Below, one piece after another: positions 7,051-56,340 of a DNA stretch of 64,000 bases. The notes under the pieces were generated by a model, which was given only the letters and a program-made list of their open reading frames with translations, had not been told where the DNA came from and did not search any database. Made by a program: the position numbers and the translations under genes. How positions within the stretch are numbered: position 1 is the first letter of the stretch; each line of letters begins with the position of its first letter. The stretch lies in the sequence record MZ475897.1; one strand, given 5' to 3'.

Positions 7051-7872
7051 TTAGTCGCCCTCTGCACTATACCAGAAGTCCCAGCCGACAACGTTTGTGC
7101 CAGTAGACTTAATGGTGAAGCCACCCAACAGGGCGTTCTCGTTCATCGCACTTGTACCATCCAGATTATATAGCTGGAATGTCCGAGATTGATTGGTTGC
7201 AGTATTGACGAACGTGATTTGCACAGACACACAGCGGTTGATGAACGGGCTGTTGAAGATAACGTTAATCGTATCAGTAGTGGATGTATTCACCACACGA
7301 CCAAAGTTCTTCGTGTAACCAGTGTTCAGATCGCGGTCGCTACCAATCCATGCGTTAGGAATAGGCTGACCTGTGATAGGGTCAAGCGCTTGTGCTACGA
7401 GATACTCATTGATAGCAGCATCACGTCCTGCATTACCAGTAGGACCAGTTGGGCCTGTAGGACCCACACCGCCTGTGTTACCTGTAGCGCCGACAGGGCC
7501 TGTGTTACCAGTAGGACCTTGACGGCCACGCTGACCACGAGGGCCAGGACAACCGTCTTCACCATCAGCACCATCACGACCATCAGCACCAGGCAGGCCA
7601 CGTAGACCGTCTTTACCCTGCTTACCTTCCTTGCCTGACTTCAACTGGTCAGCAGTAGGCAGGCCAGGCACTGTGCTCTGACTGCCGTCTGGCCATACAA
7701 TAGTAAGCGTACCACTCACTGGGTCGAACTGTACGCCTTGTGATCCCGGAATGTTAGCTGCCTCTGTCGGGTCAATAAACGCAACAGAGTTCAGCGTTTG
7801 TTTGCCGAGAACTTTACCGACAGGAAATGCACCGCCATCGATTAGTCCCGGACTTATTTTCTGCAAAGACAT
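7051..7872 (-). CDS. Collagen-like fibre protein A
   Basis: Gly-X-Y run of about 25 triplets; FDPVSGTLTI...GLPT N-module; beta-rich C-terminal head. Confidence 0.85.
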   Translation of the reverse strand: MSLQKISPGLIDGGAFPVGKVLGKQTLNSVAFIDPTEAANIPGSQGVQFDPVSGTLTIVWPDGSQSTVPGLPTADQLKSGKEGKQGKDGLRGLPGADGRDGADGEDGCPGPRGQRGRQGPTGNTGPVGATGNTGGVGPTGPTGPTGNAGRDAAINEYLVAQALDPITGQPIPNAWIGSDRDLNTGYTKNFGRVVNTSTTDTINVIFNSPFINRCVSVQITFVNTATNQSRTFQLYNLDGTSAMNENALLGGFTIKSTGTNVVGWDFWYSAEGD

Positions 7873-13045: not shown

Positions 13046-13537
13046 TTACGGTCTGACCCAGATAGCGCCTGCTGGAACTTCTTGATCTTGAGCAGGGTCA
13101 GTATCCTGGACGAAGACAGCTACCACACCTGGGTTTCCAGGAGCACCGGTCGGACCTGTAGCACCAGTAGGGCCCGCAGGACCACGAATACCAACATAGC
13201 CTTGCTTTCCTGGGAGACCATCGATACCGCGAGGACCAACACAGCCGTCAGTACCGCGCTTACCATCAGAACCCATTAAGCCATCGATACCGTCACGACC
13301 AGAAGCACCAACACCGCCTTCAGGACCATAGCCGATGCTGTAGATGGTAGGCAGGCCAGAGATAGCGAGCTTTCCGATACTCGGAATATTAATAGACAGC
13401 ACACCTGTCAGTTGATCGAAAGCGCCTTGCAGCGTTGTTTCGTCTTCGGCAACATCAACAGACACACCACCTTGAGTTGCTACTACCTTACCAGACGCAT
13501 TCGTCTTGAGTAGCGATATATCAACCTTTTCTACCAC
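13046..13537 (-). CDS. Collagen-like fibre protein B
   Basis: Gly-X-Y run; shared FDQLTGVLSI...GLPT module; C-terminal DTDP...GAIWVRP; GTG start with GGAG SD. Confidence 0.85.
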   Translation of the reverse strand: MVEKVDISLLKTNASGKVVATQGGVSVDVAEDETTLQGAFDQLTGVLSINIPSIGKLAISGLPTIYSIGYGPEGGVGASGRDGIDGLMGSDGKRGTDGCVGPRGIDGLPGKQGYVGIRGPAGPTGATGPTGAPGNPGVVAVFVQDTDPAQDQEVPAGAIWVRP

Positions 13538-13546
13538 GAGAACTCC

Positions 13547-14179
13547 TTATGGCCATGTGGTGCCTTGATCTTTAGTTGGGTCGACCCAGAGCGTACCTGC
13601 GGCTACAGCTCCCGGCTGGGTAGCGCTAACGATAATTGCAAGACGACCGGAAGGACCTGCAGGACCAGTTGGGCCAGTAGGACCAGTACCACCAGTAGAG
13701 CCAGTAGGACCAGTACCACCGCGAGGACCAGTAGGTCCAGTCGGCCCCATAGGTCCTTCACGACCTTCTCTGCCCGTAGGCCCAACATTACCGTCACGGC
13801 CATCACGGCCATCCGGGCCTGGTATGCCTTGCTCACCATCAGGGCCCACAGGACCTGTACAGCCTGGGCCGCCCGTTGCACCATCACGACCATCACGACC
13901 ATCTTTTCCGTCTGCACCTGTTTCACCTTTCTGACCTGTACGACCTGCTGGAATATCAGACGCAGTTGGGAAACCTGAGACTTTCAGACTACTGCCGTTA
14001 GCAAAGCGCAGAGTCAACACGCCCGCAGTAGCGTCATACGAGGAATCTGACGTGACTTCTGATGGAGCTTCGGACTCAGCACTGTTAACAACAAGTGTGC
14101 CGCCAGATGCTCGGACAGGTGTTGCAACAGAGCTTACGCCCGCAGCGATTAAACTTGTTTTTACCTTTATCAAACTCAT
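13547..14179 (-). CDS. Collagen-like fibre protein C
   Basis: About 35 Gly-X-Y triplets rich in GPT; shared N-module; C-terminal ATQP...GTLWVDP. Confidence 0.85.
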
Positions 14180-15615
14180 TACGTCTTCTCCGCCTGAGCA
14201 GTCATATCCGTGTTATGAGCCAGAACATCACCAACGAAATAGCAGTCGAAAGGTTCAACGTCTATGTCTACGGTATTAACGAGTTGGTCTATACGACGAC
14301 ATTCGTATACAGACACAGGACCTTTGCGCCCTCTGACTTGCATTCCTTGCTTAACTTCACGAGCAGGAACATAGCGCCATTGCTTATCATCATAGATCAG
14401 CACAGGATGTTCGTGCGTAAACTTCTGTCCATTAATGACGAAGTAGTGATCTTCCTGACCATACTTGAGTGCGCGCACAGCAGCATAGACATTCTTACCT
14501 TTCAGACTTGGTGAGGACCATTTACGGAACTCTTTAGGCTGATTGGAGAACGATGCAAGCATATCGCCTACAGACAAACGTTCAACAGGCACAGAGCCAG
14601 CGATTGTATGCACAGTAGAGCCGAACACGATACAGCCAGATGTTTTACTCACAGGGTTACGTGCCACTACGGTCAAAGCAGATTTCACAGTGACTGTAGG
14701 ACGAGACGGTTGCCCCATGTCTGTTACTAAACAACTGATGGTGCCTCTGATAGTACGGTCAGCACCGAGACCAAGACGCAGATAGAAGTTAACTATGCAT
14801 GTGTTAGTCTCTATGGCGTCAAGGTTAACGCCCTCAGTTGTTGTGATTGTCCACTTGTACTTGTATGGACCCACACCGCCACGCGCATTGACAGGCAGAT
14901 AAGCAAGCGAGGTGAATACGTCAGACCCTTGTACTGTGCGCGTGCCTACCATGTACAGACTAGACACAGAAGCAACAAGTGGGCTGATAGTAGGAAGAGG
15001 AGGTGCTGGCGATACGTTAGCAGTCGGGTACAGCCACACGAACACGTTAGATGCAGTGGGTTGCACATTAGACAGCACAGCAGTTTCGATAGGCGCAGGA
15101 CCTGTAGGACCCGTTGCACCTGCGATACAGCTTGGACCGTCATTGCCTCGTGGGCCGAGTATGCCAGTAGGACCCGTTGGACCGATTGGCCCTGTAGGTC
15201 CGTCTTTACCGTCAGGACCCGTGTCACCGTCAGGGCCAGTAGCGCCATCACGGCCAGGCTCACCCGCAGTGCCATTAAGACCTCTAGCACCAGGGAGACC
15301 ACCACAGCCGTCAGCACCAGTAGAGCCATCACGACCGTCACGACCGTCACGACCCGCAGCGCCTGGCGCACCTCTCTTACCTTGCTTACCTGAACCAAAC
15401 ATTGCACTCGTAGGCAGGCCGGGGATATTAACTAAATCCCCATTCTGTTTGATGAGTACGAGCACGCCGTTCTTACTGTCAAACTTTACGCTTGCGATCT
15501 GTGTCGTTGTCAACACATCGGAGGATTCGAATTGAATACCACCAGCAACAGCAACAACCGATTTACCTTCATCGTTGCCTGTTGTCTCGATTTGCGAAAG
15601 TTTTAAGTCTGTCAT
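14179..15615 (-). CDS. Collagen-like fibre protein D with Ig-like domain and C-terminal Hint domain
   Basis: Gly-X-Y run; Hint motifs C1 (CIVFGS), TxxH (THEH) and terminal HN followed by Thr. Confidence 0.85.
14212..14634 (-). other. Hint (intein-like) domain, 141 aa
   Basis: Cys codon 14632-14634, FTHEHP, His-Asn at 14212-14217, +1 Thr; no homing endonuclease. Confidence 0.8.
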
Positions 15616-24764: not shown

Positions 24765-24780
24765 TTTATACGCGACAGAA

Positions 24781-24810
24781 ACAAAAACGGGCAGCCTAAT
24801 GGCCACCCGG
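24781..24810 (-). terminator. Rho-independent terminator
   Basis: Minus strand CGGGTGGCC-ATTA-GGCTGCCCG-TTTTTGT. Confidence 0.8.
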
Positions 24811-24832
24811 TTCTTGCGCTTGGATTTTGTCG

Positions 24833-24994: not shown

Positions 24995-25039
24995 ATCGTC
25001 GTTACTCTTCTTTTGGCCGAACGGTATTGCATGGTTTGA

Positions 25040-26030
25040 TCAGATTACTCCGCTGCCTATCGTCCACGATCACTTAGGTTTCAGTTTCTTCATCTCTTTA
25101 CCGCCTGCGCTGCGGTCAAGCCGCACACCCTGCACACGAATCTAACACAAAGGGGCGGAAGAACCTTTATGCTCGAAACATGCACCTGGCGAAGGAGGCC
25201 ACGCATCGGTGATCTGCTGGTGTTAACACACTTTTAAGGCCTTTCTTTTGTGCACCATTCAAGAGACAGGGCCACCAGCTAGTGATCTCTTTAAGGTATC
25301 GCACTGACTTGTGAACAAGTCACGGGTTGAAAACTATACACTTCCATATGCGCATCGGGAGAAACGCATAAGGCTGATGCACAGCTTTGACTAAGAAGGA
25401 TTGCGCCCGTCGCCCGACTTCACTTGGGTATCGACAATCGTTCTCTCTTACTCCCTTGAGTACAGCGCAAGGAACACTGAGTCAATGAGTAGTCTGCGGG
25501 TGTTACTCACTAGAGGGTGAAAGCCTCTTAGATTCTCTATTCTGCACAGCACCTTAATGGACTTGAATCGCCCGCTGGAGTATCCAATAAGGCCCTCTCG
25601 GTTAGGCACCTTGCTGCACAGAAAACCCGGGGAGTACGTTACCATATAAAACGACTCTCCCCAATGCATACCAGAGCGACTTGATATGCATCAGGCAGTG
25701 AACGTTTGCAGAAGTTCAACTGCTTTGCTTCCCGCAGAACTAGAGCCACACCGTTGAGTATACGGTCCACAGTAGTTACATGCCTAGAGGATATTGCCTT
25801 GGAGTTTATGTCCTATGGAATAACCGGGCTCGTCGCGTCGGTGCCACAGCAATATTCTATCATGTGGTGCTGGGGTTGTTCCCCACATTATGCGATTGCT
25901 CGCAACCAGCTGGAGGTCTGCGTCCGATGAAAAGAATAACTAAGACGCAGATGAGCTTTTCAGAAAAAACGGCACACCAAGAAAATTGGCTAAACTCAGT
26001 GTGCGTATAGATATTACTATCTACAATTTT
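25040..26030. ncRNA. Candidate large structured non-coding RNA (strand uncertain, minus favoured)
   Basis: About 1 kb without a credible ORF in an otherwise gene-dense window; more than 12 hairpins and a multibranch helix seen by eye. Confidence 0.45.
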
Positions 26031-26051
26031 TATTTACAGATTTTTCTGAGA

Positions 26052-46938: not shown

Positions 46939-49029
46939 TTATGAGCAGCGCAGACGGGCCAGTTTATCTTCGAACGAGTCAGTGGAAGCTGAACTCTGTG
47001 ATTGAATAGGTGCACTATCTTCGTCACCCAGAAGCTGCGCTGCAACGCTTGGTTGCTGCGGCTTAACAGGTGCGGTGACCTGCTGTTGAACTACAGGCTG
47101 AGCCTGCTGCACGGTACCGGCTGCGGCTTCGATTGACTGTGCAACTTCGTTCTGTGCAGTTTCAGACATAGACATAAGAGTCTGTGCTTTTGCCAGAGAA
47201 GTTGTCAGGAAATCTTTTCCATGCGCGATAAACGCGTTTTGAATCAGCGCGTTCGGGTCTTTGATGCCTGCGGCAGACAGAGAGCGAACGAGAGAATCAA
47301 CTATCGGGTTACGCACTTCACCCCAGTAGTTTTTGGTGATACCCAGCTGAGCAGAAGACAGGGCAGCAATCAAACGTTCCTGATGGGAAGCAACAGTGTC
47401 GTTGATGGTAGACGATACGCTGGTAGTGGCTTCGTTGATGCGAGCATCAGATTCAGCAACCAGCAACTTGTCTACAGGCATTTCGATTTGATACGGCATA
47501 AAGCCATACGCTTCGACTGTACCTACAACACCGCTTTGAACCAGGCTGTGTGAAACGGCACGGATGAAATTATCAGTTGCGAAAGATTTACGCGCAACTT
47601 CTTCACCAACAACGTTAGACACAGAGTTGAACGTGGCGCGAGCAACTGGCTGGCCGTCGTAGTACATGTGTACCGATTCGACTTTACCGCCGTTAGAACG
47701 GCTGAGGCTTACCAGGGTCGGGTCCAGTTCGCCGTACTGAGCTTGTACGGTAGACAGGCTGTCGAAGGTGCGATTAACGACTTTAGATTCAGAATCGAAG
47801 TCTTCATCGTCGAGGTCGAGATCATCTTCTTCCAGATCTTCGTCCTCGTCGAGGTCTTCGTCCTCGTCGAGGTCTTCGTCTTCATCAGCGCCAGACTCAG
47901 AATCGAAATCTTCGTCTTCGTCTTCGTCGTCGAGGTCCAGATCGTCTTCATCCAGACCTTCGTCGTCGTCGCCTGCACCAGATTCGGAGTCGAAGTCTTC
48001 GTCATCTTCGAGGTCTTCCTCGTCTTCGTCGTCCAGATCATCTTCATCCAGATCTTCGTTGTCGAGGTCATCCTCTTCGTCTTCCTCTTCCTCTTCGTCT
48101 TCGTCGAAGTCATCTTCATCGAAGTCGTCTTCATCTTCATCACCATCAGATGATTCAGAATCAAAGTCGTCGTCAGAATCTTCGTCTTCGTCGTCGAGGT
48201 CCAGATCGTCTTCGTCCAGGATATCAATGTCGCTGTCGCTATCATCGTCACCGGAGTTAGATTCAATCGGCTCGTCGACCAGCGCCGCAGAGCAATGCGC
48301 ACAGAAGACAGGCTCTTCATCGGAGCTTACAGTAAACGGCTGTTCGCATTTAGCGGAGCAGCTATAGATGTGAGCTTCGACGGTACCGTCAGCGGCAGCA
48401 GAAGACAGAGCAGTAACAGCTTCAGGAGCGTCCTGAGCATCACAGCTATCAACAGCCTGGCCGGTGTACGGGTCGAATTTGGCAACAGTAGCAGCGTTGA
48501 AGCTACCAGTGTTGGACAGCGCTGTGAACGTTTGAGCACCAGACAGGGCCTGCGCGAAGTTGCGTTGAGCTTCTTCGGCAGTCTCGCCAGTAGCGATCAG
48601 GCTCGCGTGTTCAATCTGTTCATCAGCGTTTGCGCTCTCAGCAAGGAACTGTGATACGCGTTCATCAGTGATTTCTGACAGGTCAGCAGAGCACGACGGG
48701 CAGCAGCCCTGAACGAGCGAAGCACTGTCGCTGATAACGTGGCTACCACAACCATCCAGACAGATAGTGTAATGCGCCTTCACGTCACCAGCAGAAGACT
48801 GAGACTGAACTTCGGCTTTCTCAACCAAATCAGGATGCTCATCCAGCAGTTCGTTACCGCCGGTTGGGTTGTAGAGGTCAGCGCCACTTTGCGAAGCAAA
48901 GCCCACACCGTCAGAAGAACCATAAATCATTAAGTTCTGGCCTAACGCAGTGCGACGAAAGTTCTCTACTGCCTGATTATGGTTTTTACCGACACACAGG
49001 ATACCCGCGAGTTGGGTAATCTTTGGCAT
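46939..49029 (-). CDS. Prohead scaffold or core protein with CxxC motifs and a ~155-aa Asp/Glu tract
   Basis: C..C pairs, acidic tract at about 47790-48260; GAGG SD supports ATG 49029. Confidence 0.65.
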   Translation of the reverse strand: MPKITQLAGILCVGKNHNQAVENFRRTALGQNLMIYGSSDGVGFASQSGADLYNPTGGNELLDEHPDLVEKAEVQSQSSAGDVKAHYTICLDGCGSHVISDSASLVQGCCPSCSADLSEITDERVSQFLAESANADEQIEHASLIATGETAEEAQRNFAQALSGAQTFTALSNTGSFNAATVAKFDPYTGQAVDSCDAQDAPEAVTALSSAAADGTVEAHIYSCSAKCEQPFTVSSDEEPVFCAHCSAALVDEPIESNSGDDDSDSDIDILDEDDLDLDDEDEDSDDDFDSESSDGDEDEDDFDEDDFDEDEEEEEDEEDDLDNEDLDEDDLDDEDEEDLEDDEDFDSESGAGDDDEGLDEDDLDLDDEDEDEDFDSESGADEDEDLDEDEDLDEDEDLEEDDLDLDDEDFDSESKVVNRTFDSLSTVQAQYGELDPTLVSLSRSNGGKVESVHMYYDGQPVARATFNSVSNVVGEEVARKSFATDNFIRAVSHSLVQSGVVGTVEAYGFMPYQIEMPVDKLLVAESDARINEATTSVSSTINDTVASHQERLIAALSSAQLGITKNYWGEVRNPIVDSLVRSLSAAGIKDPNALIQNAFIAHGKDFLTTSLAKAQTLMSMSETAQNEVAQSIEAAAGTVQQAQPVVQQQVTAPVKPQQPSVAAQLLGDEDSAPIQSQSSASTDSFEDKLARLRCS
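47790..48260 (-). repeat. Low-complexity acidic tract with (D/E)DLD(E/L) and FDSES repeats
   Basis: TCGTCTTC-rich DNA; four FDSES copies. Confidence 0.9.
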
Positions 49030-49074
49030 GGTTAAAACCCTCATAAGGAATGAAGTCGTTGAATCGACAGGTTG

Positions 49075-49107: not shown

Positions 49108-50238
49108 TTAGACTTTTCTGCTATCAATATCTGACTGAGGAATATAGCGATTTTCGAAGTATTTATTCACTACTTCGACACCGTTTAGCGTATAAACGTT
49201 ACGCAAACTATCTCCCCATACCATTAGTTCTGCCAGCGTTGCAAAGTGCTCCGTAGGCACGGATTTAATGGTCAGTGCATTGTTCGAATCAGGATGGATT
49301 CGCTTACCACGAATGGCCTGATCAAACTTCATACGGTCTACGTTACGTAGCATAGTATGGTCCACAAAGTGAGCCAATTCATGCGTCATAACGTGGGCCA
49401 TACTTTTGCTGTTATATCCACCCAGCAGACGAACAAGCTGTTGTGGACTAATAGCGATAACACCGTACATAAAGCCACGAATCATGTACGTGCTAATGTG
49501 AGAACCGCCTACATCGTTACCTTCCTGACCACCCAGAATAGAAACGTACAGACGCTTAAACGGCAGATTAACGTTCAGCCCTACAGCAGGCATTACGTTG
49601 TCCTGGATATCCTTTAGCACGAATGCTGGTGGGCTAACACCGTTGACTGAGATGTTTAGGCCAGGGATATTCAGTTCATCTGCACCACGCACTTCGAGAT
49701 GTACCGTACCACATTTAGGCAGTGGTTGAATTGCGTAGTTGTTTGGCGTACCACCAGCATAAGCAATATCAGAGTATTGCAGAGGCGTGAATTTACCGAA
49801 CTGAGGCCTGTCAAGTTCTCGACGTTGACGCGCTTCTTTGGACGCACGATCATCATCGATAGGAGTATCAACAGGAGGTTTTGGCTCGGGTTCAGGCGGT
49901 GGGATTGGCACTTCGGCAGCGGCAGGTTTTGGAACTTTCGCAGGCTTAGGCACTTTGACAGGCTTAGGCTTAGCAGACTTCTCCTCGTACGGAGTAAAGT
50001 CAAAGCCATCAAACAACGCATCAGGCTGAGCAGCAAAAGGTCTGCTATTAGCCAGTATCATTCCAGCGCTCTCCCCGCTGATTGCAACAGCTTGAGGGTA
50101 CTTAGGGTGAGCGATGTAATAGAGGTCATCGTTAACTTGATGGAGACCTACGACCTCGCGCGGCTGCATACGCACACCATTTGAAATCATAGTATCTCCA
50201 CCTAAGTAACGGACGAATTTGTAGTCCGTTATATCCAT
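49108..50238 (-). CDS. SH3-like module, Pro/Lys linker and HExxH zinc-metallopeptidase-like domain
   Basis: THELAHFVDH plus downstream EHFATLAE; start at ATG 50238 by TAATG coupling. Confidence 0.7.
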   Translation of the reverse strand: MDITDYKFVRYLGGDTMISNGVRMQPREVVGLHQVNDDLYYIAHPKYPQAVAISGESAGMILANSRPFAAQPDALFDGFDFTPYEEKSAKPKPVKVPKPAKVPKPAAAEVPIPPPEPEPKPPVDTPIDDDRASKEARQRRELDRPQFGKFTPLQYSDIAYAGGTPNNYAIQPLPKCGTVHLEVRGADELNIPGLNISVNGVSPPAFVLKDIQDNVMPAVGLNVNLPFKRLYVSILGGQEGNDVGGSHISTYMIRGFMYGVIAISPQQLVRLLGGYNSKSMAHVMTHELAHFVDHTMLRNVDRMKFDQAIRGKRIHPDSNNALTIKSVPTEHFATLAELMVWGDSLRNVYTLNGVEVVNKYFENRYIPQSDIDSRKV

Positions 50239-51017
50239 TAACGCATCCGCAGCAGGTGTTCTTTGTACGTTGCAGCACAAGCAAACGCTGGGTCATCCAC
50301 AGAGCTACACTCGAAACCAGTGAGACCCTTACAGTCACGATACACCAGGCGGCCTGTACGTGCATCCAAATACGTAGGCTTGTTGAACGCTGTGTGCGAA
50401 CAGAAGTTACGATTCTTCGGCGTTACCATCTGACCACAGATACTGCATTTATAAGCACGGTAGGTTGTGCCCTTGCTGTACGTGTTCAGTTCACCGCTGA
50501 GAATACGGTCACAACGTTCCTTACAGCGCGTGCGGTCAAACGCCAGCAACAGAGTCAGACGCGCATGATTGCCACGGAAGTTTTTCAGCTTAGACAGGTT
50601 TGAGTCAAAGATCATGCCCATTGCTTGGCGATAGTCTTTGTTGTTGTGCTCGATAAACGTCGGCTTACCAACGAACGTCTGATACGCAAGGCGTCCTTGA
50701 TCAGGGTTAAACGTCAACCATTCCTGTAAGCTGAATGCATCACCGTTAGTGTTCGGCAGCTCCGTGATGTTTACCACAACAGGCGCAATGATATAGTCAC
50801 GGATATCACGCGAGGTGTTGTACATCTCAGCAGCTTTAGGCAGCCACACGTTAACGTCGAGGTTAAAAGATCCCGTCTCAATACCGAAACGCGAAGCATC
50901 AACACGAATAGACTTAGCGTTTCGGCTAACATCTTCTTTGTGCATATCAATCGCGTTCAGTCCGACGAGGCCCATGTCTGAGGTATCAAACGACTCAGAC
51001 TTGATGAGCTGGGTCAT
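50238..51017 (-). CDS. Prohead maturation protease (herpes/HK97-type fold)
   Basis: PNTNGDAF, TFVGKPTFIEH, YSKG...CSICG...CSH, FECSSVDDPA; upstream of scaffold and capsid genes. Confidence 0.75.
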   Translation of the reverse strand: MTQLIKSESFDTSDMGLVGLNAIDMHKEDVSRNAKSIRVDASRFGIETGSFNLDVNVWLPKAAEMYNTSRDIRDYIIAPVVVNITELPNTNGDAFSLQEWLTFNPDQGRLAYQTFVGKPTFIEHNNKDYRQAMGMIFDSNLSKLKNFRGNHARLTLLLAFDRTRCKERCDRILSGELNTYSKGTTYRAYKCSICGQMVTPKNRNFCSHTAFNKPTYLDARTGRLVYRDCKGLTGFECSSVDDPAFACAATYKEHLLRMR

Positions 51018-51027
51018 CGTGTTCTCC

Positions 51028-51444
51028 CTATTGGAAATTGTTTATGTTATCAAGGCCGCAATTGGCTAGACGCACATGCGACTCAGGCACCTCGAAGATT
51101 TGAGAGCAACCCAAGTCGGTCAGTTGATATATCAATCGTCCATTAGAAATTATTGCGTTTTCAACATAGGCAGCAACTTCTGTACCATCTTCTTGCTTGA
51201 CCATAACTTCAACGCCAGGATAGAATACGTCGAAACTCTTGGAGCTAAAGATAGGTCGAACAATGTCGGTCTCTGCAACAGGATGCTGGGCATAGCGCGT
51301 TTGAATCATATACAGCGCACAGTCACCGCTGATCAGGATAGTATTGATTGTGCCACGCAGATTGTACGGAGCACCCTGAGCAGTAGTGCCAGCAACGAAC
51401 GTGACAATATCACCGATGTTATACGCAAACGAGAACTGAGCCAT
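51028..51444 (-). CDS. Small protein with two tandem SH3/KOW-like barrels
   Basis: YNIGDIV... and FYPGVEV... repeats; GAGG SD at ATG 51444. Confidence 0.6.
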   Translation of the reverse strand: MAQFSFAYNIGDIVTFVAGTTAQGAPYNLRGTINTILISGDCALYMIQTRYAQHPVAETDIVRPIFSSKSFDVFYPGVEVMVKQEDGTEVAAYVENAIISNGRLIYQLTDLGCSQIFEVPESHVRLANCGLDNINNFQ

Positions 51445-51445
51445 G

Positions 51446-52300
51446 TTAACCTCGAAGTGCACCACGCGCCCAAGACTTAGCGAGAGCCAGAGTCATACGG
51501 CTAGGGTTCTGGAGTTTGACTTCACCCCGATGAACAGCAGTGAATGGTTCATTAGGGTTCTCGCTGCGTCCAGAACGATACGCAGATTCATTGAAGCCAT
51601 CAAACAAAGTAACCAGCCAGCCAGTTGACTTGTCCGAGCATTCGCCGCACTTGTTGTCCCAGCTAATCTTACCGCATGTACGGCCACCAGCATTGATAGC
51701 GTATGACACACGGTCTTTGTCTGAGTAAACGTCCTTAGCACGAATGGTCTTGAACGTCACACGAGACGAGGACTCGGAGCGTGGCATCATGCGTGCTTTA
51801 ATCGCTTCTGTATCAATAGAGGACCAGAATGATTCAAACAGCATACCCAGCTTCTGATCGATAGGCAGCTTGAGTCCATTGATTTGCGCAATGGTACTGG
51901 AGCTGTCATTGATAACGCGATTCAGGAAGTAGCCACCAATGATTATCGGCAGCTGTGTTCCCTGTGAGCCTACAGTGATACCAGATTGCTTGCAGTAGAT
52001 CTCAGACAGACCGATAGCAAGACGCGCAAGAACCTTGAACGTCTCTTTCTCTGTCGTGTTTGCGATTTCAGTATACAGACGCGCGGCAATATTCGGCACG
52101 ACTGTACGCTTGGCAACGCTGGCAATATCTTCGGCTGTGATAGTCTGACCAAGTTTCTTCTTGGCCGCTAACGCAAAGGCGTTATACAGGCTGGCTTTGT
52201 TCTCCGACGTCAGGGCCTCGTTCAGCTTGCTGATCGTCGTCTCCGCGCTGCTTTTCAGACTCGGAGTTTGAACTGTTTTGAGTCTCGCAACTTTCGGCAT
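51446..52300 (-). CDS. Hypothetical protein
   Basis: 284 aa with GGAG SD; overlaps the 3' end of the GT gene by 119 nt. Confidence 0.65.
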   Translation of the reverse strand: MPKVARLKTVQTPSLKSSAETTISKLNEALTSENKASLYNAFALAAKKKLGQTITAEDIASVAKRTVVPNIAARLYTEIANTTEKETFKVLARLAIGLSEIYCKQSGITVGSQGTQLPIIIGGYFLNRVINDSSSTIAQINGLKLPIDQKLGMLFESFWSSIDTEAIKARMMPRSESSSRVTFKTIRAKDVYSDKDRVSYAINAGGRTCGKISWDNKCGECSDKSTGWLVTLFDGFNESAYRSGRSENPNEPFTAVHRGEVKLQNPSRMTLALAKSWARGALRG

Positions 52301-53414
52301 TGGAGTTTTTCTCCTGGTTGAGGGCTTGCTTTGCTAAAATACCAAGCAGGCCAGAGGCTTTGATTTCTGTCTCAACGTCAAGCCCACGATGCAGACTGAG
52401 TTGAGCTAAATAGTTCAATGCAGGTTCGACCATATTAAGATTACGACAACCCCAATAGGCGCATTCGTAACATAAGTCTAAATTAACAGAGGTCTGGTCA
52501 AACAAGAAACTTTTTGGATTCTGTTGCGCAACAGACAGTCCCTGTATAGCCATGCCCACAGAGTTGATCATATCGTCACGGCGATAGAAAATATCAGACA
52601 GCATCGCGTAGCACTCAATACGATCAGAGCGGGCTGCAATAGCACGGTAGCAGCAGTTAACGGCTTCCTGAATAAAGCCCTGCTTGAACGTTGCTTTTGA
52701 CAGTTCCAGATTAGCCACAGCAACATAGTCAGACCACGTTGCGAGTTTGGTGAGACGTGCCACTTCGGCGCGTGCATCATCAAGCAGGTCAGCACGGTCA
52801 TAGTAAGCAACCGAATAGCACAGTTCACGCGCATAATAGAACGAGCAGCGCTGGTCACGAGGCCAATCGCCCGCATCACGCGCCAGCTCCATGAGATAAC
52901 CACGAGGCTTAGTGTGATCTGGGAAATGGTCAGTAGCGAACTCAGCACGCACAGTATGCGGTGGGTTACCTTCACGAATACGCATCAATACTTCATGCGC
53001 ACGGTAGCGCCACGTATACGCTCGGCTCTTGTATGCTTTCATCTGGTCATACTGGCTATCGCCGTTACGCATCAGAATCCAAACACCATCAGCCTGTTCA
53101 ATGTCAGGCATCTGACGTAACTTCTCAACCCAATCTGGATCGTCGAAGCGTTCATCAATGTCCAGCCAAACGATTAAATCATCTTCATGGAATGGCGCAG
53201 CGGCCAGGTCGCGACTAGCACCCAGATTGCGTTCTTCGGAGATGTCCGTAGAGTGATACAGCGCTGGGTGCGCGAACTCGGAAACAATCTGAGTCGTTGC
53301 ATCAATGCTGCCTGTGTCCACGATACTGATAGCATCAGCAGCAGACACATGCTTCAACCACTCGGCCATATTCTTTTCTTCATCACGGCAAATAGCCGCT
53401 ACGCAAATTCTCAT
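52182..53414 (-). CDS. Glycosyltransferase family 2 with TPR-like C-terminus
   Basis: ICRDEEK, IVDTGSIDAT, WLDIDE (DxD), YRAHE, YYARE; helical repeats. Confidence 0.88.
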   Translation of the reverse strand: MRICVAAICRDEEKNMAEWLKHVSAADAISIVDTGSIDATTQIVSEFAHPALYHSTDISEERNLGASRDLAAAPFHEDDLIVWLDIDERFDDPDWVEKLRQMPDIEQADGVWILMRNGDSQYDQMKAYKSRAYTWRYRAHEVLMRIREGNPPHTVRAEFATDHFPDHTKPRGYLMELARDAGDWPRDQRCSFYYARELCYSVAYYDRADLLDDARAEVARLTKLATWSDYVAVANLELSKATFKQGFIQEAVNCCYRAIAARSDRIECYAMLSDIFYRRDDMINSVGMAIQGLSVAQQNPKSFLFDQTSVNLDLCYECAYWGCRNLNMVEPALNYLAQLSLHRGLDVETEIKASGLLGILAKQALNQEKNSNAESCETQNSSNSESEKQRGDDDQQAERGPDVGEQSQPV

Positions 53415-53425
53415 GAGTGCCTCTT

Positions 53426-54328
53426 TTATACAAGAACGTTACCGCTATCCCACCACTTCTTGCCATAGATTTCAGACAGGCGGTAGTCAAGCACGATTGG
53501 TTGGTCAAGATCGACCTGAAGGATATCGCGACCTAGTGCAGCGCTATAAACTGTTTTCTCCTCAGTGTATACGCGTATCTCTAGTTCCATGTCGCCTTGC
53601 GAATACTTGGGAACGAACGGCACATTCAGATCGCCATTGAACCCCTGACCGAGCGTATCGTCAAAGTAAGTAGACATACGAATCTCGGTACCCTGATTGA
53701 TAATGGTGGGTGCATACACCATGCGATTGTTATACGCCGTGTAGTCGGCCACCGTGGACTGTTGAATCAGGCGGCGCTTATAGATGCGCGTTACGCCTTT
53801 GTCATCCACTACCGTACGATACTGATTGTAGAACCAGTTGATCTCATAGAACTTAACTGGCTTGAGGCCAGCAGATGAAACCAACGAGGCAGTCATACGG
53901 TGATAGGTCTTCTCCGTATTCAGACGATAGAGCAGAATCTTAAACGCGTACCATTGGTAAACGTCTAACGTGATTGAGCCTGCATCTGATTGCTGAGTAC
54001 CGTTAGTGAGGATATACGAGAAGCAATCGCCACCAACGTAACCGCTACGGGGATCGTAAATGAACGCATCACTAAAGCTATTCAGTTCGACAGTACCCAA
54101 CAGTGGGTCGCTCACTTTGATTGCAGCAAGGCGCCAACCACGCTGGGCTGGAACCTTGTCGAGAACGCCTTCTGTGGGACTGTGACCTGTTAGCTCGTCG
54201 CGTGCGCCTTGCAGAATCTGATCGATAGTGATTTCAGTTTTACCTGAGTTCTTCACACGTATCGTTCTGTTTGGTGCTATTGGCTTATAGTTGCGCCAGT
54301 AGTCAAACGTACAAGGCAAAGAGAGCAT
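53426..54328 (-). CDS. Virion protein with N-terminal cadherin/Ig-like domain
   Basis: LGTVELN...FIYDPRSGYVGGDCFSY..TNG pattern. Confidence 0.65.
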   Translation of the reverse strand: MLSLPCTFDYWRNYKPIAPNRTIRVKNSGKTEITIDQILQGARDELTGHSPTEGVLDKVPAQRGWRLAAIKVSDPLLGTVELNSFSDAFIYDPRSGYVGGDCFSYILTNGTQQSDAGSITLDVYQWYAFKILLYRLNTEKTYHRMTASLVSSAGLKPVKFYEINWFYNQYRTVVDDKGVTRIYKRRLIQQSTVADYTAYNNRMVYAPTIINQGTEIRMSTYFDDTLGQGFNGDLNVPFVPKYSQGDMELEIRVYTEEKTVYSAALGRDILQVDLDQPIVLDYRLSEIYGKKWWDSGNVLV

Positions 54329-54330
54329 AG

Positions 54331-56301
54331 TCACTCCAACTTATATTTACGTCGGAACTCTGCTAGACCCATGACAGGAATGCCTTTGTCCATGGCCTTC
54401 TGGAGTTTCGCAGAACCCGAGCCTGGGTCTTTGGCGATAAGAATGGTTGTATCTGCTTTCATGCTATCTGAGGCAGTACCACCAAGCTCAACGATACGCT
54501 GCATCAGTTCACGATCACGAATGCCTGTGAATGCAACGTTAACGCCTTTCAGCTTAGAACTCTTCACCTGAACACGTTTCGGTGCAACCAGCTTAACACC
54601 GATTTCATTTGCAAGCTGATACGCAGAAACACACGCAAGAGCAATATCAGGCGATTTTGTTTTGATGCCGTGAATATCCGAGATAGCTTTAGCGAGCGCC
54701 AGAGGATTCTGTTTGCGCACTAGCTTGTCAAGGTCAGGCACGCTATCGACCACTTTATCAAACGTAGTGTTAGCGCCACGCATGAAGTAAGGCGAGCACG
54801 CTTTGAGCCACGTATTGACAGCAACGCCTGAGCGTAATGCTTTGAGGTCTTTCGCAAGCTGAGCGCCACGCGAGTCACCAACCACTTCACGCAGCACACC
54901 GATAGTTGCAGCGAACAAACGGGCAGGTGTATCAATGCCAGACTCTACGAGCAGCTTCGACGTACTCGGTCCTGTGTTAGCAACGTCCAATCCTTTGAGG
55001 AATGAACTGAGCAGTCGAGTAGTGCCTACCTCAGTCTTGGTATTGATAACGAACTCAACGCCATTGACTTTGTAAGGCACATCAGGCAGCTTTGGCTTCT
55101 TCGCAGGCTTGAGAATCTCCATGATGTATGGGATTACCTTACCGCTACGAATCAGCTTGACCGTAGCACCTGGGCCAAGAGGCTTCTTAGCATGAGGCGC
55201 AGTCGCTTTGCCTTTAGGCTTGAGGTAGCCGTGCTCAACATAGAATCCATTGTGACCATTAGCACGCTGCACAGTGACGCCACCAGTCATCAACGTTGGT
55301 GGGAAGATAACAACAGGCTGCAAGATACCGTACTTGGTTTCTTGATAGATAACATCCTCTACCTTAACGATCACTGTGTCAGCTTCTGCATTCATCTTAA
55401 ACTTGAATGCGTGCTTTGGATTGGATGCAGTCGCTTTAGGGCTGGGTACATCTTCCGTGAGTACAACACCATCCAGCTCGTAGATAGCTTTAGACAGACG
55501 GCGCTCCAAGAACGCGATCAACTCATCTTCTGAATTGAAGCGCTTTGGTGGCGTATGCCTAACGACTTCGAATCCCCAGCGCTCTAGCAGGGCGAACTGC
55601 TTAGACTGTTTGAGCGTAGCACCGTCACCGCCGATGATAGAGAAGCACACCATGCGGACGTACTTGAACTCGGACGCTGTTTCAAAGTTACGCACAAGTC
55701 CAGACGCAGCGTTACGCGCAGCCTTGAAGCGACCACCAGCAGACTCATGCATCTTAGCCATGAATGTCTTTTGAGGAATGAGTGCCTCGAAGCGCAACAC
55801 CGTCTGACCTCTGACTGGAATCTTTTTAGGGATTTTCATCGCAGGGATATGATGGGATACGTCTTTACCGTGAGTAGCATCACCACGGGTATAAGCCTTT
55901 ACAGGCACACCGTCTTGATACACAATCTCAAGGCTCAAGCCATCGAGCTTGTCGGTTGCAACGTAGTCCACATCTTTCGACAGTGCTTTGGCAATCTGCT
56001 TCGAGCCTGCCTGAAACTGATTGAGACTTGCCATAGGTACAGGCAGCTTAACATCAGCATCATCACGCTGACCAATCTTACGAGCCAGCTTCGACTTAGG
56101 CCATTTAGCGTCGATGTAGTTACGGATTGAATCGTACACTGCATCGCTCACCAGACCTTCATCATCCGTATGATATGCGTTGTCCAGAGCGGTTATTAAG
56201 TTACGCACTTGCGTCTGGTTCAAGGTGTCCAAGACCTTTTGAGGGTTCTTGGACAGTTGCTTGAGACTAACAGAGGCAGAAATAGAAAGCCTTACTTTCA
56301 T
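54331..56301 (-). CDS. ligA: NAD+-dependent DNA ligase
   Basis: Domain Ia (AYH...VSDAVYD), KLDG, TRGD, ARNAASG, LDGVV, AFKFK, OB fold, C-terminal BRCT. Confidence 0.92.
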   Translation of the reverse strand: MKVRLSISASVSLKQLSKNPQKVLDTLNQTQVRNLITALDNAYHTDDEGLVSDAVYDSIRNYIDAKWPKSKLARKIGQRDDADVKLPVPMASLNQFQAGSKQIAKALSKDVDYVATDKLDGLSLEIVYQDGVPVKAYTRGDATHGKDVSHHIPAMKIPKKIPVRGQTVLRFEALIPQKTFMAKMHESAGGRFKAARNAASGLVRNFETASEFKYVRMVCFSIIGGDGATLKQSKQFALLERWGFEVVRHTPPKRFNSEDELIAFLERRLSKAIYELDGVVLTEDVPSPKATASNPKHAFKFKMNAEADTVIVKVEDVIYQETKYGILQPVVIFPPTLMTGGVTVQRANGHNGFYVEHGYLKPKGKATAPHAKKPLGPGATVKLIRSGKVIPYIMEILKPAKKPKLPDVPYKVNGVEFVINTKTEVGTTRLLSSFLKGLDVANTGPSTSKLLVESGIDTPARLFAATIGVLREVVGDSRGAQLAKDLKALRSGVAVNTWLKACSPYFMRGANTTFDKVVDSVPDLDKLVRKQNPLALAKAISDIHGIKTKSPDIALACVSAYQLANEIGVKLVAPKRVQVKSSKLKGVNVAFTGIRDRELMQRIVELGGTASDSMKADTTILIAKDPGSGSAKLQKAMDKGIPVMGLAEFRRKYKLE

Positions 56302-56340
56302 GCTTTTCTCCGATCGACATTAACACTCTTGTTTACAGTG

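What the first reader, a model, noticed from the sequence alone, without database searches (positions are those of the whole stretch)
52182..53414. Phage-encoded GT2-TPR glycosyltransferase, possibly glycosylating GPT-rich collagen fibres
Seen: an intact GT2 (DxD = DIDE) with TPR-like tail sits among structural genes, and four collagen-like genes with Thr-rich GPT/GAT/GST halves lie in the same window. Known: GPT-rich Bacillus BclA collagen is O-glycosylated, GT2-TPR enzymes glycosylate surface proteins, and giant viruses glycosylate their fibrils. Inference: a virion 'hair' glycosylation system that could affect adhesion, stability or recognition. DNA or host-surface modification are alternatives.
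Basis: inference. Interest (0 to 1): 0.7.

Follow-up and report, generated by a model that had tools for sequence, protein, structure and literature searches.

The report
Phage sugar-transferase linked to collagen fibres
A giant Erwinia phage carries an intact sugar-adding enzyme whose closest bacterial relatives sit next to threonine-rich collagen-like genes, so it probably sugar-coats the phage's own four collagen-like tail fibres, although nobody has yet looked for the sugars.

Summary
Window 52182-53414 (-) encodes an intact 410-aa GT2 enzyme with a GT-A domain, an invariant DxD (DIDE), a C-terminal TPR domain and a disordered acidic tail. The window is Erwinia jumbo phage pEa_SNUABM_21, from the 'hairy myovirus' Lu11/PaBG/Y3/AD1 clade. 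Four Pfam-collagen tail-fibre genes lie at 7.0-15.6 kb, with Thr-rich distal halves.

The gene is already annotated ('beta-1,4-glycosyltransferase', PHROG 13126). What is new here is its family placement. Its best solved matches are protein/peptide glycosyltransferases (GmaR, SunS/ThuS). Of its 79 closest bacterial relatives (Bacillota, 25-31% identity, one genome per species), 45 have a Thr-rich collagen-like gene within 2 kb. Collagen coverage falls from 9.1% beside the GT to 0% at 8-10 kb. This matches the characterised SgtA-BclA3 pair of C. difficile. Of 69 unrelated viral contigs, 31 also show a Thr-rich collagen tract within 10 kb.

Caveats:
- In this clade the GT lies 36.6 kb from the fibres, fixed in the head-gene region.
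- Fibre Thr content is modest (26% of Y positions).
- Co-occurrence within the clade is confounded by phylogeny.
- No glycan data exist.

Verdict: an SgtA-like protein O-glycosyltransferase. The collagen fibres are the most likely acceptor (about 0.5). Interest is moderate to high.

The parts
52182..53414 (-). GT2-TPR glycosyltransferase gene (410 aa), intact
   Evidence: ORF. Pfam PF00535 above its cutoff. PHROG 13126 over full length. 100% identical to pEa_SNUABM_21 and its sister phages. AF2 pLDDT 88.6.
52920..53414 (-). GT-A catalytic domain (aa 1-165)
   Evidence: Alternating strands and helices in the AF2 model. Profile match to the GmaR catalytic domain, E=2.8e-27. Invariant DTGSxD, R68, DxD and H140-E141.
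53151..53162 (-). DxD metal/nucleotide-sugar motif D85-I-D87-E88 (DIDE)
   Evidence: D85 and D87 are invariant and E88 nearly invariant in alignment A1 of 24 homologues.
52305..52895 (-). TPR-like helical repeat domain (aa 174-370), the presumed acceptor-binding module
   Evidence: Eleven helices in the AF2 model. Profile hits to consensus TPR, OGT-TPR and MamA. Pfam TPR domains in distant homologues. The alignment to a collagen-linked Clostridium enzyme runs through this domain.
52185..52304 (-). Disordered acidic S/E/Q/N-rich C-terminal tail (aa 371-410, net charge -7 over aa 365-410)
   Evidence: pLDDT <50 for residues 373-403. Variable among homologues and absent in the Dickeya JA-phage orthologues. 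Composition.
14179..15615 (-). Collagen-like fibre protein, 478 aa, 29 G-X-Y triplets, C-terminal Hint/intein-like region; candidate acceptor
   Evidence: Pfam Collagen 1e-13; weak Hint_2. The Y3 orthologue is annotated 'tail protein, contains intein domain'.
13547..14179 (-). Collagen-like fibre protein, 210 aa, 34 triplets (13 Thr at Y, 6 GPT); candidate acceptor
   Evidence: Annotated as tail fiber protein in NC_061451 and Y3.
13046..13537 (-). Collagen-like fibre protein, 163 aa, 23 triplets; candidate acceptor
7051..7872 (-). Collagen-like fibre protein, 273 aa, 24 triplets (7 Thr at Y, all in the distal half), weak gp53-like C-terminal hit; candidate acceptor
53426..54334 (-). Protein X (302 aa): conserved upstream neighbour of the GT, all-beta tandem Ig-like fold, probable virion (collar/neck-type) protein; alternative acceptor candidate
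   Evidence: PHROG 36743. Weak Big_9 hit. AF2 pLDDT 82.7. Foldseek top hits are collar/neck proteins of Agrobacterium phages 7-7-1 and Milano, E 1e-7 to 1e-6 with low TM. The X-GT order is conserved in distant contigs.
51446..52300 (-). Protein Y (PHROG 31537, function unknown): conserved downstream neighbour. The longest ORF overlaps the GT 3' end by 119 nt; RefSeq of the sister phage uses a later start, equivalent to 51446-52099.
   Evidence: The same position is conserved in L008, L009, L011 and PaBG.

Best explanation
The gene encodes a soluble, cytoplasmic, metal-dependent (DxD) GT-A-fold glycosyltransferase fused to a TPR acceptor-binding domain. It belongs to the family exemplified by C. 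difficile SgtA, Listeria GmaR and the glycocin enzymes SunS/ThuS, which glycosylate proteins and peptides.

Proposed mechanism (inferred). The gene is probably expressed with the structural genes of the same long co-directional array. The enzyme would take a host nucleotide sugar, since the phage genome has no annotated sugar-synthesis genes. UDP-GlcNAc or UDP-hexose is most plausible. It would transfer a monosaccharide onto Thr (or Ser) hydroxyls of the GPT/GxT triplets. These are concentrated in the distal halves of the four collagen-like tail-fibre proteins (7051-7872, 13046-13537, 13547-14179, 14179-15615). Transfer could happen before or after trimerisation. The likely result is fixed-length collagen stalks of about 20-29 nm carrying O-glycans. 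Such glycans could stabilise a hydroxyproline-free triple helix and/or shield the fibre.

Shown: the enzyme's integrity, fold, conserved catalytic motifs and family placement; the collagen nature of the fibres; and the genomic coupling of the enzyme's relatives to Thr-rich collagen genes. Inferred: the acceptor, the sugar, the timing and the physiological effect.
For: (1) Integrity and motifs.
(2) Protein/peptide-GT family. GmaR is the best solved-sequence hit, E=5e-6 alone and 2.8e-27 with the profile. ThuS and SunS are the best full-length fold matches, E about 3e-11 over about 380 columns covering both domains.
(3) Guilt by association in cellular relatives. Of the 79 closest bacterial relatives, one genome per GTDB species, all Bacillota, 49 have a Thr-rich G-X-Y tract in the fetched locus. 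45 have one within 2 kb, and 42 of the 49 are on the same strand. The fraction of bases in such tracts falls from 9.1% at 0-1 kb to 5.4, 3.4, 1.7, 0.8 and 0.0% at 8-10 kb. Among loci with at least 5 kb on both sides, 26 of 39 have one within 5 kb. All 10 partner ORFs tested are Pfam Collagen.
(4) The phage GT aligns across both domains (residues 2-335, 27% identity, E=3e-25) with a C. estertheticum TPR-glycosyltransferase whose gene lies 200 bp upstream of a GPT-collagen gene.
(5) Experimental precedent. SgtA is 358 aa with GT-A plus TPR domains and is encoded immediately upstream of bclA3. It adds beta-O-GlcNAc from UDP-GlcNAc to Thr of GPT collagen-repeat peptides (PMC7157674).
(6) The same theme recurs in viruses. 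31 of 69 non-clade viral contigs with a GT relative have a Thr-rich collagen tract within 10 kb, and 27 of the 31 are on the same strand.
(7) Every cultured clade member with the GT also has the fibre family, and no discordant genome was found.
(8) Fibre Thr clusters such as GPT-GPT-GPT are partly conserved as far as PaBG, with 10 shared Thr positions against 5.0 expected.
(9) The GT is the only glycosyltransferase annotated in the near-identical 265-kb genome of pEa_SNUABM_7, which has no annotated sugar-nucleotide or base-hypermodification genes.
Against: (1) In this clade the GT is 36.6-45 kb from the fibre genes. Its position is fixed as ligase - X - GT - Y - prohead protease, even in very distant jumbo-phage contigs and in PaBG. 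That position fits a head- or neck-related role as well.
(2) Thr fills only 26% of Y positions in the phage tracts, against 73% in the bacterial partner tracts. In PaBG the 29-triplet fibre keeps only 2 Thr.
(3) Co-occurrence inside the clade is confounded by phylogeny, because both are core genes.
(4) Identity to the collagen-linked bacterial enzymes is only 25-31%, so acceptor specificity may have changed.
(5) In the non-clade viral contigs, collagen coverage does not decay sharply with distance from the GT, and no background rate for viral contigs was measured.
(6) Direct homology to SgtA itself could not be tested, because it was not recovered by name.
(7) There are no glycoprotein or mass-spectrometry data for any clade member in the sources held.
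Confidence: 0.5

Rival explanations
1. The enzyme is a protein O-glycosyltransferase, but its acceptors are other virion proteins encoded near it. Candidates are the Ig-like collar-type protein X immediately upstream, the Ser/Thr-rich sheath-type protein, or capsid proteins. This would resemble capsid and tail-tube glycosylation in mycobacteriophages.
For: The order ligase - X - GT - Y - prohead protease is conserved across the clade, PaBG and very distant 224-kb contigs. The GT start lies 11 nt after the stop of X, with its own strong RBS. X is predicted to be an all-beta Ig-like protein resembling phage collar/neck proteins. The sheath-type protein at 62605-63777 has a 30-aa window that is 47% Ser/Thr, and the MCP has one at 40%. 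Phage virion glycosylation of non-collagen proteins has a published precedent, Freeman et al. 2023, cited in PMC12582341 and PMC12894461.
Against: The MCP Ser/Thr stretch is a strongly conserved, evidently structured segment, not a disordered acceptor tail. None of the relatives' neighbourhoods points to Ig-like or capsid partners, whereas 45 of 79 point to collagen. Gene adjacency in a long co-directional late array is weak evidence of enzyme-substrate pairing, since a DNA ligase sits in the same array.
Confidence: 0.2
2. The enzyme modifies a non-structural target: a host protein (host takeover or superinfection exclusion), a phage regulatory protein, or a small secreted peptide in the manner of glycocins. 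Alternatively it moonlights as a regulator, as GmaR does.
For: GmaR, the closest solved sequence relative, is both a flagellin O-GlcNAc transferase and an anti-repressor. SunS and ThuS, the closest full-length folds, act on small peptides. PHROGs files the family under 'moron, auxiliary metabolic gene and host takeover'. The function of the variable acidic disordered tail is unexplained.
Against: The gene is a syntenic core gene inside the structural array of a whole jumbo-phage lineage infecting different genera (Erwinia, Dickeya, Yersinia, Pseudomonas). That is atypical for host-specific takeover morons. No small Cys-rich peptide gene or transporter typical of glycocin clusters lies beside it. 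The closest cellular relatives are collagen-linked, not flagellin- or bacteriocin-linked.
Confidence: 0.12
3. The acceptor is not a protein. The enzyme would glycosylate phage DNA bases (anti-restriction) or a host envelope polymer (LPS, EPS, lipid carrier), as the database names 'beta-1,4-glycosyltransferase' and 'GtrB-like' suggest.
For: There is a weak N-terminal match to PHROG 841 (GtrB-like O-antigen conversion, E=2.6e-4). TarS, RmlT, chondroitin synthase and WrtF appear as lower-ranked GT-A matches. Phage GTs are conventionally interpreted this way (PMC10202952).
Against: There is no transmembrane segment: maximum Kyte-Doolittle hydropathy is 0.72 against a threshold of about 1.6. GtrB-type enzymes are membrane-anchored (established knowledge). 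A TPR domain is a protein-binding module. No hydroxymethyl-pyrimidine or other base-hypermodification genes are annotated in the genome. Seroconversion has no obvious use for a strictly lytic jumbo phage (inference). The polysaccharide and teichoic-acid GT matches cover only the generic GT-A core.
Confidence: 0.08
4. The protein is catalytically inactive and serves only as a TPR scaffold or assembly chaperone.
For: TPR proteins often act as chaperones or scaffolds, and the gene lies among morphogenesis genes.
Against: All nucleotide-sugar and metal-binding signature residues (DTGSxD, R68, DxD, H140-E141) are invariant from 100% down to 22% identity. That indicates purifying selection on catalysis.
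Confidence: 0.03

Closest known systems
C. difficile SgtA / BclA3 (spore exosporium collagen-like glycoprotein and its O-GlcNAc transferase; PMC7157674)
   Same: A stand-alone soluble enzyme of about 360-410 aa with an N-terminal GT-A domain and C-terminal TPRs. SgtA's acceptor is Thr in GPT triplets of a collagen-like region. The phage has GPT/GxT-rich collagen tracts, and the phage enzyme's closest bacterial relatives show the same GT-next-to-collagen gene arrangement.
   Different: The setting is a phage virion fibre rather than a spore surface, and a Gram-negative host. The GT is 36.6 kb from the fibre genes rather than adjacent. Fibre tracts are short, fixed in length (23-34 triplets) and only 26% Thr at Y. 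Sequence homology to SgtA itself was not tested, and activity is not demonstrated.
Listeria monocytogenes GmaR (flagellin O-GlcNAc transferase / MogR anti-repressor; PDB 22ao)
   Same: It is the best solved-sequence relative of the catalytic domain (profile E=2.8e-27), sharing the DTGS.D, DxD and HE motifs. It is a GT2 + TPR protein glycosyltransferase.
   Different: GmaR's acceptor is flagellin, and it has a second, regulatory function. No flagellin-type acceptor or repressor partner is evident in the phage.
SunS / ThuS glycocin S-glycosyltransferases (PDB 7msn, 7msp, 7msk; SunS is SPbeta-prophage encoded)
   Same: They are the best full-length fold matches: a GT-A domain followed by a helical repeat domain, about 380 aligned columns, E about 3e-11. 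They are also phage- or prophage-borne peptide glycosyltransferases.
   Different: They glycosylate Cys or Ser of small bacteriocin precursors encoded next to them. Identity is 13-16%, the domain orientation differs (TM about 0.54), and the phage has no glycocin-type cluster.
Mycobacteriophage virion glycosylation (Freeman et al. 2023, cited in PMC12582341 and PMC12894461; paper not held)
   Same: Phage-encoded glycosyltransferases modify the phage's own virion proteins.
   Different: From my own knowledge, unverified here: the acceptors there are capsid and tail-tube subunits, the hosts are actinobacteria, and several GT genes are involved. Here there is a single GT2-TPR gene and collagen-like fibres in a proteobacterial jumbo phage.
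Giant-virus fibril and collagen glycosylation (review PMC9614988)
   Same: Virus-encoded glycosylation machinery decorates surface fibres. Collagen-like proteins and glycosyltransferases are encoded together in the genome.
   Different: Those are eukaryotic viruses with multi-gene glycan pathways, including sugar-nucleotide synthesis. Here a single transferase would rely on host nucleotide sugars.
Existing database annotation: PHROG 13126 / RefSeq 'beta-1,4-glycosyltransferase'; GenBank 'glycosyl transferase, group 2 family protein' (Y3, Yoloswag, AD1)
   Same: The same gene family, already recognised as a GT2.
   Different: The name implies a polysaccharide linkage specificity for which there is no evidence. 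Neither the TPR domain nor the collagen-linked family context is annotated.

Membership tests
Glycosyltransferase family 2 (GT-A fold, DxD, metal-dependent) | Match to Pfam PF00535 above the curated threshold | tested here: met
   32.3 bits against a cutoff of 23.3, residues 7-152.
Glycosyltransferase family 2 (GT-A fold, DxD, metal-dependent) | Conserved DxD and nucleotide-binding motifs | tested here: met
   D85/D87 (DIDE), D33-T-G-S-x-D38 and R68 are invariant in 24 homologues.
Glycosyltransferase family 2 (GT-A fold, DxD, metal-dependent) | GT-A alpha/beta fold | tested here: met
   AF2 model pLDDT 88.6. Foldseek hits to SunS, ThuS, TarS, RmlT and WrtF.
GT-A + TPR protein/peptide glycosyltransferases (SgtA, GmaR, SunS/ThuS type) | C-terminal TPR/helical-repeat domain fused to the GT-A domain | tested here: met
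   Helices at residues 174-370. Consensus-TPR profile hits at E 1e-23 to 1e-42. Pfam TPR in distant homologues.
GT-A + TPR protein/peptide glycosyltransferases (SgtA, GmaR, SunS/ThuS type) | Closest characterised relatives are protein/peptide glycosyltransferases | tested here: met
   GmaR at E=2.8e-27, ThuS 6e-15 and SunS about 3e-13 by profile. ThuS and SunS are the top full-length fold matches.
GT-A + TPR protein/peptide glycosyltransferases (SgtA, GmaR, SunS/ThuS type) | Gene adjacent to the gene of its acceptor | tested here: not met
   The nearest collagen gene is 36,567 bp away. Adjacency is met in 45 of 79 bacterial relatives, but not in any of 10 clade loci.
GT-A + TPR protein/peptide glycosyltransferases (SgtA, GmaR, SunS/ThuS type) | Demonstrated transfer of a sugar to Ser/Thr/Cys of a polypeptide | not testable with these tools
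   This needs biochemical or mass-spectrometric data, and none was found for this clade.
SgtA-like collagen-repeat O-GlcNAc transferases specifically | Direct sequence homology to C. difficile SgtA | not tested
   SgtA was not recoverable by name among 4810 hits of a collagen-linked Clostridium homologue, and no tool fetches it by accession. Only its size (358 aa) and architecture, taken from PMC7157674, match.
SgtA-like collagen-repeat O-GlcNAc transferases specifically | Homology across both domains to enzymes encoded beside Thr-rich collagen genes | tested here: met
   27% identity over residues 2-335, E=3e-25, to the C. estertheticum enzyme. In 62 of 79 bacterial matches the alignment extends past residue 250, into the TPR domain.
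Prokaryotic collagen-like proteins (the four fibres) | Uninterrupted G-X-Y repeats matching Pfam Collagen | tested here: met
   23-34 triplets each. PF01391 at E about 1e-13, roughly 50 bits against a 27.2 cutoff.
BclA-type glycosylated exosporium collagens (the four fibres) | Long, length-variable, predominantly GPT tract with a BclA-type C-terminal domain | tested here: not met
   Thr is only 26% of Y positions. Tract lengths are fixed across the clade. No BclA-type C-terminal domain was found by Pfam. The fibres resemble BclA only in having GPT clusters.
GtrB-like bactoprenol glucosyltransferases (O-antigen conversion) | Membrane anchoring (C-terminal TM helices) and full-length family match | tested here: not met
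   No hydrophobic segment, maximum KD 0.72. PHROG 841 matches only residues 2-145 at E=2.6e-4.
Phage DNA base glycosyltransferases | Co-occurrence with genes that make a hydroxylated or hydroxymethylated base; similarity to known DNA GTs | tested here: not met
   No such genes are annotated in the 346-gene sister genome, and no DNA-GT appears among PDB or Pfam hits. This rests on annotation only, and most genes are 'hypothetical'.

The most novel reading that the evidence does not exclude
SgtA-like GT2-TPR enzymes paired with Thr-rich collagen-like fibres would be a widespread and so far unrecognised virion-glycosylation system of tailed phages. In the 'hairy' jumbo-phage clade (Erwinia, Dickeya, Yersinia and Pseudomonas hosts) it would be a core trait. 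It would O-glycosylate four fixed-length collagen stalks, substituting for hydroxyproline in stabilising the triple helix and/or masking the fibres. That would extend phage virion glycosylation from actinobacteriophage capsids to the collagen fibres of Gram-negative phages.
Probability: 0.35. Interest if true: 0.75.

Novelty: new variant of a known kind. Interest (0 to 1): 0.6.

Why it matters
Phage virion glycosylation was recognised only recently and only in mycobacteriophages. Collagen-like tail fibres are common in phages, but how they fold stably without hydroxyproline is unexplained.

If this enzyme glycosylates the fibres, three things follow:
- It gives a mechanism for fibre stability or masking.
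- It adds a post-translational layer to host recognition in a group of phages being developed against fire blight and soft rot.
- It re-labels a gene family now annotated as 'beta-1,4-glycosyltransferase / host takeover'.

The comparative result stands on its own. A large Bacillota family of GT2-TPR enzymes is tightly linked to Thr-rich collagen genes, and the same pairing recurs on many viral contigs. The hypothesis can be tested directly by mass spectrometry on phage stocks that already exist.

Tried and rejected
1. Co-occurrence of the GT and collagen genes across cultured phages. The two sets are essentially identical (67 against 65 records), but all belong to one clade, so I rejected this as evidence.
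2. Virion mass-spectrometry evidence. The Y3 paper and Freeman et al. 2023 are not held. The PaBG paper lists 14 virion proteins without a table I could map, and its 'glycosyl' matches shown were DNA glycosylases or N-glycosylase. The Y3 GenBank notes carry no MS flags.
3. Linking to SgtA by name through a Clostridium homologue. No C. difficile entry appeared among the 120 listed hits.
4. Sigma-70 promoter and terminator scan around the GT. Counts were at shuffle expectation, so no transcription-unit boundary could be inferred. These phages encode their own sigma factor.
5. MCP C-terminal Ser/Thr stretch as an acceptor. It is a conserved, structured segment, so I downgraded it.
6. Protein X as an enzymatic partner. 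It has an Ig-like structural fold, not an enzyme fold.
7. The DNA-glycosylation paper (PMC13326640) for GT2/TPR enzymes. There were no mentions.
8. The 'Ca. Nanopelagicales' phage paper. It mentions a GT and collagen-like proteins but draws no link between them.
9. The 1.3-kb ORF-poor gap at 24.7-26.05 kb. There were no Rfam hits and no repeats.
10. Background rate of collagen tracts in random viral contigs. I did not measure it, so the viral-contig association is descriptive only.


Full report
WHAT THE WINDOW IS. Window 50000-56500 is 100% identical to Erwinia phage pEa_SNUABM_21 (MZ475897.1, 265 kb) at record positions 112000-118500, and 98-99% identical to its sister isolates, genus Snuvirus. 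At 72-75% nucleotide identity it matches Dickeya phage AD1, Erwinia phage Y3 and the Alexandra-like phages. These belong to the Lu11/PaBG/NCTB/Dickeya/Erwinia group (PMC7412058). Members imaged so far (Lu11, Y3, and the Dickeya JA phages and AD1) show the 'hairy Myoviridae' morphology (PMC6143709). Essentially all genes in the window are on the minus strand, in one long structural array. Read from 3' to 5' on the plus strand, that array holds tail-fibre genes, baseplate, tube/sheath, major head protein, acidic head proteins, prohead protease, the GT, DNA ligase and sheath paralogues.

CHECK OF THE OBSERVATION. The ORF at 52182-53414 (-) is intact and 410 aa long. It has an AAGAGG ribosome-binding site 5 nt before the ATG, directly after the stop of the upstream gene. 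It passes the Pfam GT2 threshold and matches PHROG 13126 end to end. The AF2 model is confident (pLDDT 88.6, pTM 0.83). It shows a GT-A alpha/beta domain (about aa 1-165), eleven helices (aa 174-370) and a disordered tail. The tail is acidic (net charge -7 over aa 365-410), variable, and absent in the JA-phage orthologues. The helical part is a true TPR domain: the family profile hits consensus TPR proteins at E 1e-23 to 1e-42, and distant homologues carry Pfam TPR models.

The four collagen-like genes are real. Their uninterrupted G-X-Y runs are 24, 23, 34 and 29 triplets long, and each matches Pfam Collagen at E about 1e-13. Each protein has an N-terminal domain of about 75 aa, then a charged proximal half of the collagen tract, an invariant Cys at triplet 10, and a GPT/GxT-rich distal half. 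Of the 29 Thr at Y positions, 24 lie in the distal halves.

WHAT KIND OF ENZYME IT IS. The gene is already annotated as a GT2, so the gene itself is not new. The family placement is informative. The only significant solved-sequence hit of the single protein is Listeria GmaR, a flagellin O-GlcNAc transferase (E=5e-6). With the family profile, GmaR's catalytic domain scores E=2.8e-27, followed by the glycocin S-glycosyltransferases ThuS and SunS. By fold, ThuS and SunS are the top matches and align over about 380 columns, covering both domains. Wall-teichoic-acid enzymes (TarS, RmlT) match only the GT-A core at much weaker E-values. The protein has no hydrophobic segment. It is therefore a soluble GT-A+TPR enzyme of the type that glycosylates polypeptides. 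A profile search of 1.84 billion cluster representatives shows this is a very large family: 1,997 representatives at E<=1e-30, many of them stand-alone proteins of 350-370 aa. The few with names come from Clostridiales or Oscillospiraceae MAGs.

THE DECISIVE COMPARATIVE RESULT. I fetched the 80 best matches to the family in one genome per GTDB species and the 80 best in IMG/VR, each with up to 10 kb of flank. I scanned them for stop-free G-X-Y runs of at least 8 triplets. One bacterial 'hit' (L014) is a clade phage binned into a MAG. The other 79 are all Bacillota and are 25-31% identical to the phage enzyme.

- 49 of the 79 have a Thr-rich collagen tract (Thr at 30% or more of Y positions) in the locus.
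- 45 of the 79 have one within 2 kb of the GT.
- 42 of the 49 have it on the same strand as the GT.
- The share of bases lying in such tracts falls steadily with distance from the GT: 9.1% (0-1 kb), 5.4%, 3.4%, 1.7%, 0.8% and 0.0% (8-10 kb). This serves as an internal control.
- Among loci with at least 5 kb on both sides, 26 of 39 have a tract within 5 kb.
- In these partner tracts Thr fills 73% of Y positions.
- All 10 partner ORFs I tested are Pfam Collagen proteins.
- The phage enzyme aligns through both domains (residues 2-335, 27% identity, E=3e-25) with a C. estertheticum 'TPR-containing glycosyltransferase'. That gene ends 200 bp upstream of a GPT-collagen gene.

This arrangement matches the one experimentally characterised case. 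C. difficile SgtA (358 aa, GT-A 1-260 plus TPR 262-358) is encoded immediately upstream of bclA3. It transfers beta-O-GlcNAc from UDP-GlcNAc, with Mn2+, to Thr (and Ser) of GPT collagen-repeat peptides (PMC7157674). Among 69 viral contigs outside the clade, 31 have a Thr-rich collagen tract within 10 kb of the GT relative, and 27 of those 31 are on the same strand. There the decay with distance is not sharp, and I measured no background rate.

WHAT ARGUES AGAINST THE FIBRES AS ACCEPTOR. In this clade the pairing is not by adjacency: none of 10 clade loci has a collagen tract within 10 kb. Instead the GT occupies a fixed slot: NAD-ligase, X (about 300 aa), GT, Y, small ORF, prohead protease. 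That slot is kept in metagenomic relatives at 42% identity (L008), in a very distant homologue on a 224-kb contig (L011), and with small insertions in PaBG. The GT is thus a core gene of the head-proximal part of the structural array.

X is predicted (pLDDT 82.7) to be an all-beta tandem Ig-like protein. Its best structural matches are collar/neck proteins of Agrobacterium phages 7-7-1 and Milano, with E 1e-7 to 1e-6 but low TM. It is probably a virion protein and could itself be an acceptor. A sheath-type protein and the MCP contain Ser/Thr-rich windows. The MCP window, however, is a strongly conserved, structured segment.

The fibre tracts are only 26% Thr at Y. Thr positions are only partly conserved in PaBG: 10 are shared against 5.0 expected, and one fibre keeps just 2 Thr. 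Co-occurrence of the GT and fibres in about 60 cultured genomes is perfect, but it carries no weight because they form a single lineage.

OTHER ALTERNATIVES. Several points argue against DNA or envelope-polymer glycosylation. The protein has a TPR domain and no membrane anchor. The match to GtrB-like PHROG 841 is weak and covers only the N-terminus. The annotated sister genome lacks base-hypermodification and sugar-nucleotide genes, and this GT is its only annotated glycosyltransferase. That last point rests on annotation only. A host-takeover or regulatory role, as with GmaR, cannot be excluded. It fits poorly, though, with a syntenic core gene shared by phages of four host genera. Loss of catalysis is unlikely given the invariant motifs.

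MECHANISM PROPOSED. The shown parts are the enzyme's class and integrity, the collagen fibres, and the family-wide genetic coupling to Thr-rich collagens.

The inferred parts are as follows. The enzyme would be made with the late structural genes, but no promoter or terminator signal above chance separates it from its neighbours. It would use a host UDP-sugar and O-glycosylate Thr in the distal GxT clusters of the four fibres.

The tract lengths are conserved exactly from the Erwinia phages to PaBG: 29, 34 and 23 triplets, and 24 against 25. The stalks are therefore fixed rulers, about 20-29 nm long at 0.286 nm rise per residue (established collagen geometry). Glycosylated Thr at the Y position is known to stabilise hydroxyproline-free collagen triple helices, as in vent-worm cuticle collagen (my own knowledge, not checked here). 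That offers a plausible benefit. Whether these fibres are the 'hairs' seen on the sheath is unknown.

NOVELTY AND VERDICT. The gene and its GT2 label are known. SgtA-type glycosylation of collagen repeats is known in spores. Virion glycosylation is known in mycobacteriophages (cited). I found nothing in the held literature that connects phage collagen-like fibres with an SgtA-like enzyme. The 2026 jumbo-phage review mentions neither collagen nor glycosylation.

I rate this a new variant of a known kind. Confidence is about 0.8 that it is an active protein O-glycosyltransferase of the SgtA/GmaR class, and about 0.5 that the collagen fibres are its acceptors.

Noticed in passing
window 7420-7635, 13121-13327, 13640-13945, 15130-15390 (-); L007 (Y3); L013 (PaBG): The four collagen tracts have exactly conserved lengths from the Erwinia phages to Pseudomonas phage PaBG: 29, 34 and 23 triplets, and 24 against 25. 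All 12 tracts examined have a Cys at the X position of triplet 10, preceded by a GRD-rich stretch. This suggests a conserved inter-chain disulfide knot and a ruler-like function.
   Followed up: partly
window 14179-15615 (-), aa ~327-470: The 478-aa collagen-like fibre protein ends in a Hint/intein-like region (Pfam Hint_2, weak, E=0.0035). The Y3 and NCTB orthologues are annotated 'contains intein domain'. This may be a self-cleaving C-terminal module. The Dickeya JA-phage orthologues match only residues 4-321 of this protein, so they may lack this region.
   Followed up: partly
window 46939-49044, 49108-50280 and 56341-58287 (-): Two proteins carry an N-terminal KMPT-N domain (390 aa and 648 aa), and two have extraordinarily long Asp/Glu-rich tracts (701 aa and 648 aa). 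They flank the prohead protease and the GT, and are presumably internal head or scaffold proteins. PHROG labels the 701-aa one 'ATPase', with no support from Pfam.
   Followed up: no
window ~24734-26051: A stretch of about 1.3 kb in the baseplate module has no ORF longer than 76 aa but coding-like GC (about 0.49). It is also unannotated at the same place in pEa_SNUABM_7 and Y3. It has no Rfam match at E<=0.1 and no direct or inverted repeats.
   Followed up: partly
window 8096-10969 (-): A 957-aa protein between the collagen-fibre genes carries an ILEI (interleukin-like EMT inducer / FAM3-type) domain above the Pfam threshold (E=4e-7) and a weak hydrophobin-like hit. This is unusual for a phage tail module.
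   Followed up: no
L014 (JAVWLC010000025.1, 'MAG: Raoultibacter sp.'): A 13.9-kb contig binned as an actinobacterial Raoultibacter MAG encodes a GT 69% identical to the phage enzyme over its full length. It is almost certainly a jumbo-phage contig of this clade mis-binned into the MAG.
   Followed up: no
PV550095.1 (Alcaligenes phage Afa-NA1, 78 kb) and PV359490.1 (Salmonella phage Sen-NF, 108 kb): Two records named for unrelated hosts give identical hits for the GT (41.8%, E=6e-74) and for the 478-aa fibre (37.7%, E=2e-59). Both seem to contain the same fragment of a jumbo phage of this lineage, which suggests partial or chimeric assemblies or mislabelled hosts.
   Followed up: no
L145, L153/L155, L166, L142, L116 (IMG/VR contigs): Some viral contigs with a GT2 relative carry very large collagen-like ORFs next to it, with up to 293-470 uninterrupted triplets. 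Some have unusual GVQ/GTT/GAT repeat units rather than GPT.
   Followed up: no
window 51446-52300 vs 52182-53414 (-): The longest ORF of the downstream gene Y overlaps the GT 3' end by 119 nt. RefSeq of the sister phage starts Y later (equivalent to 51446-52099), and the Y3 annotation has a 35-nt overlap. The true start of Y is unresolved.
   Followed up: partly
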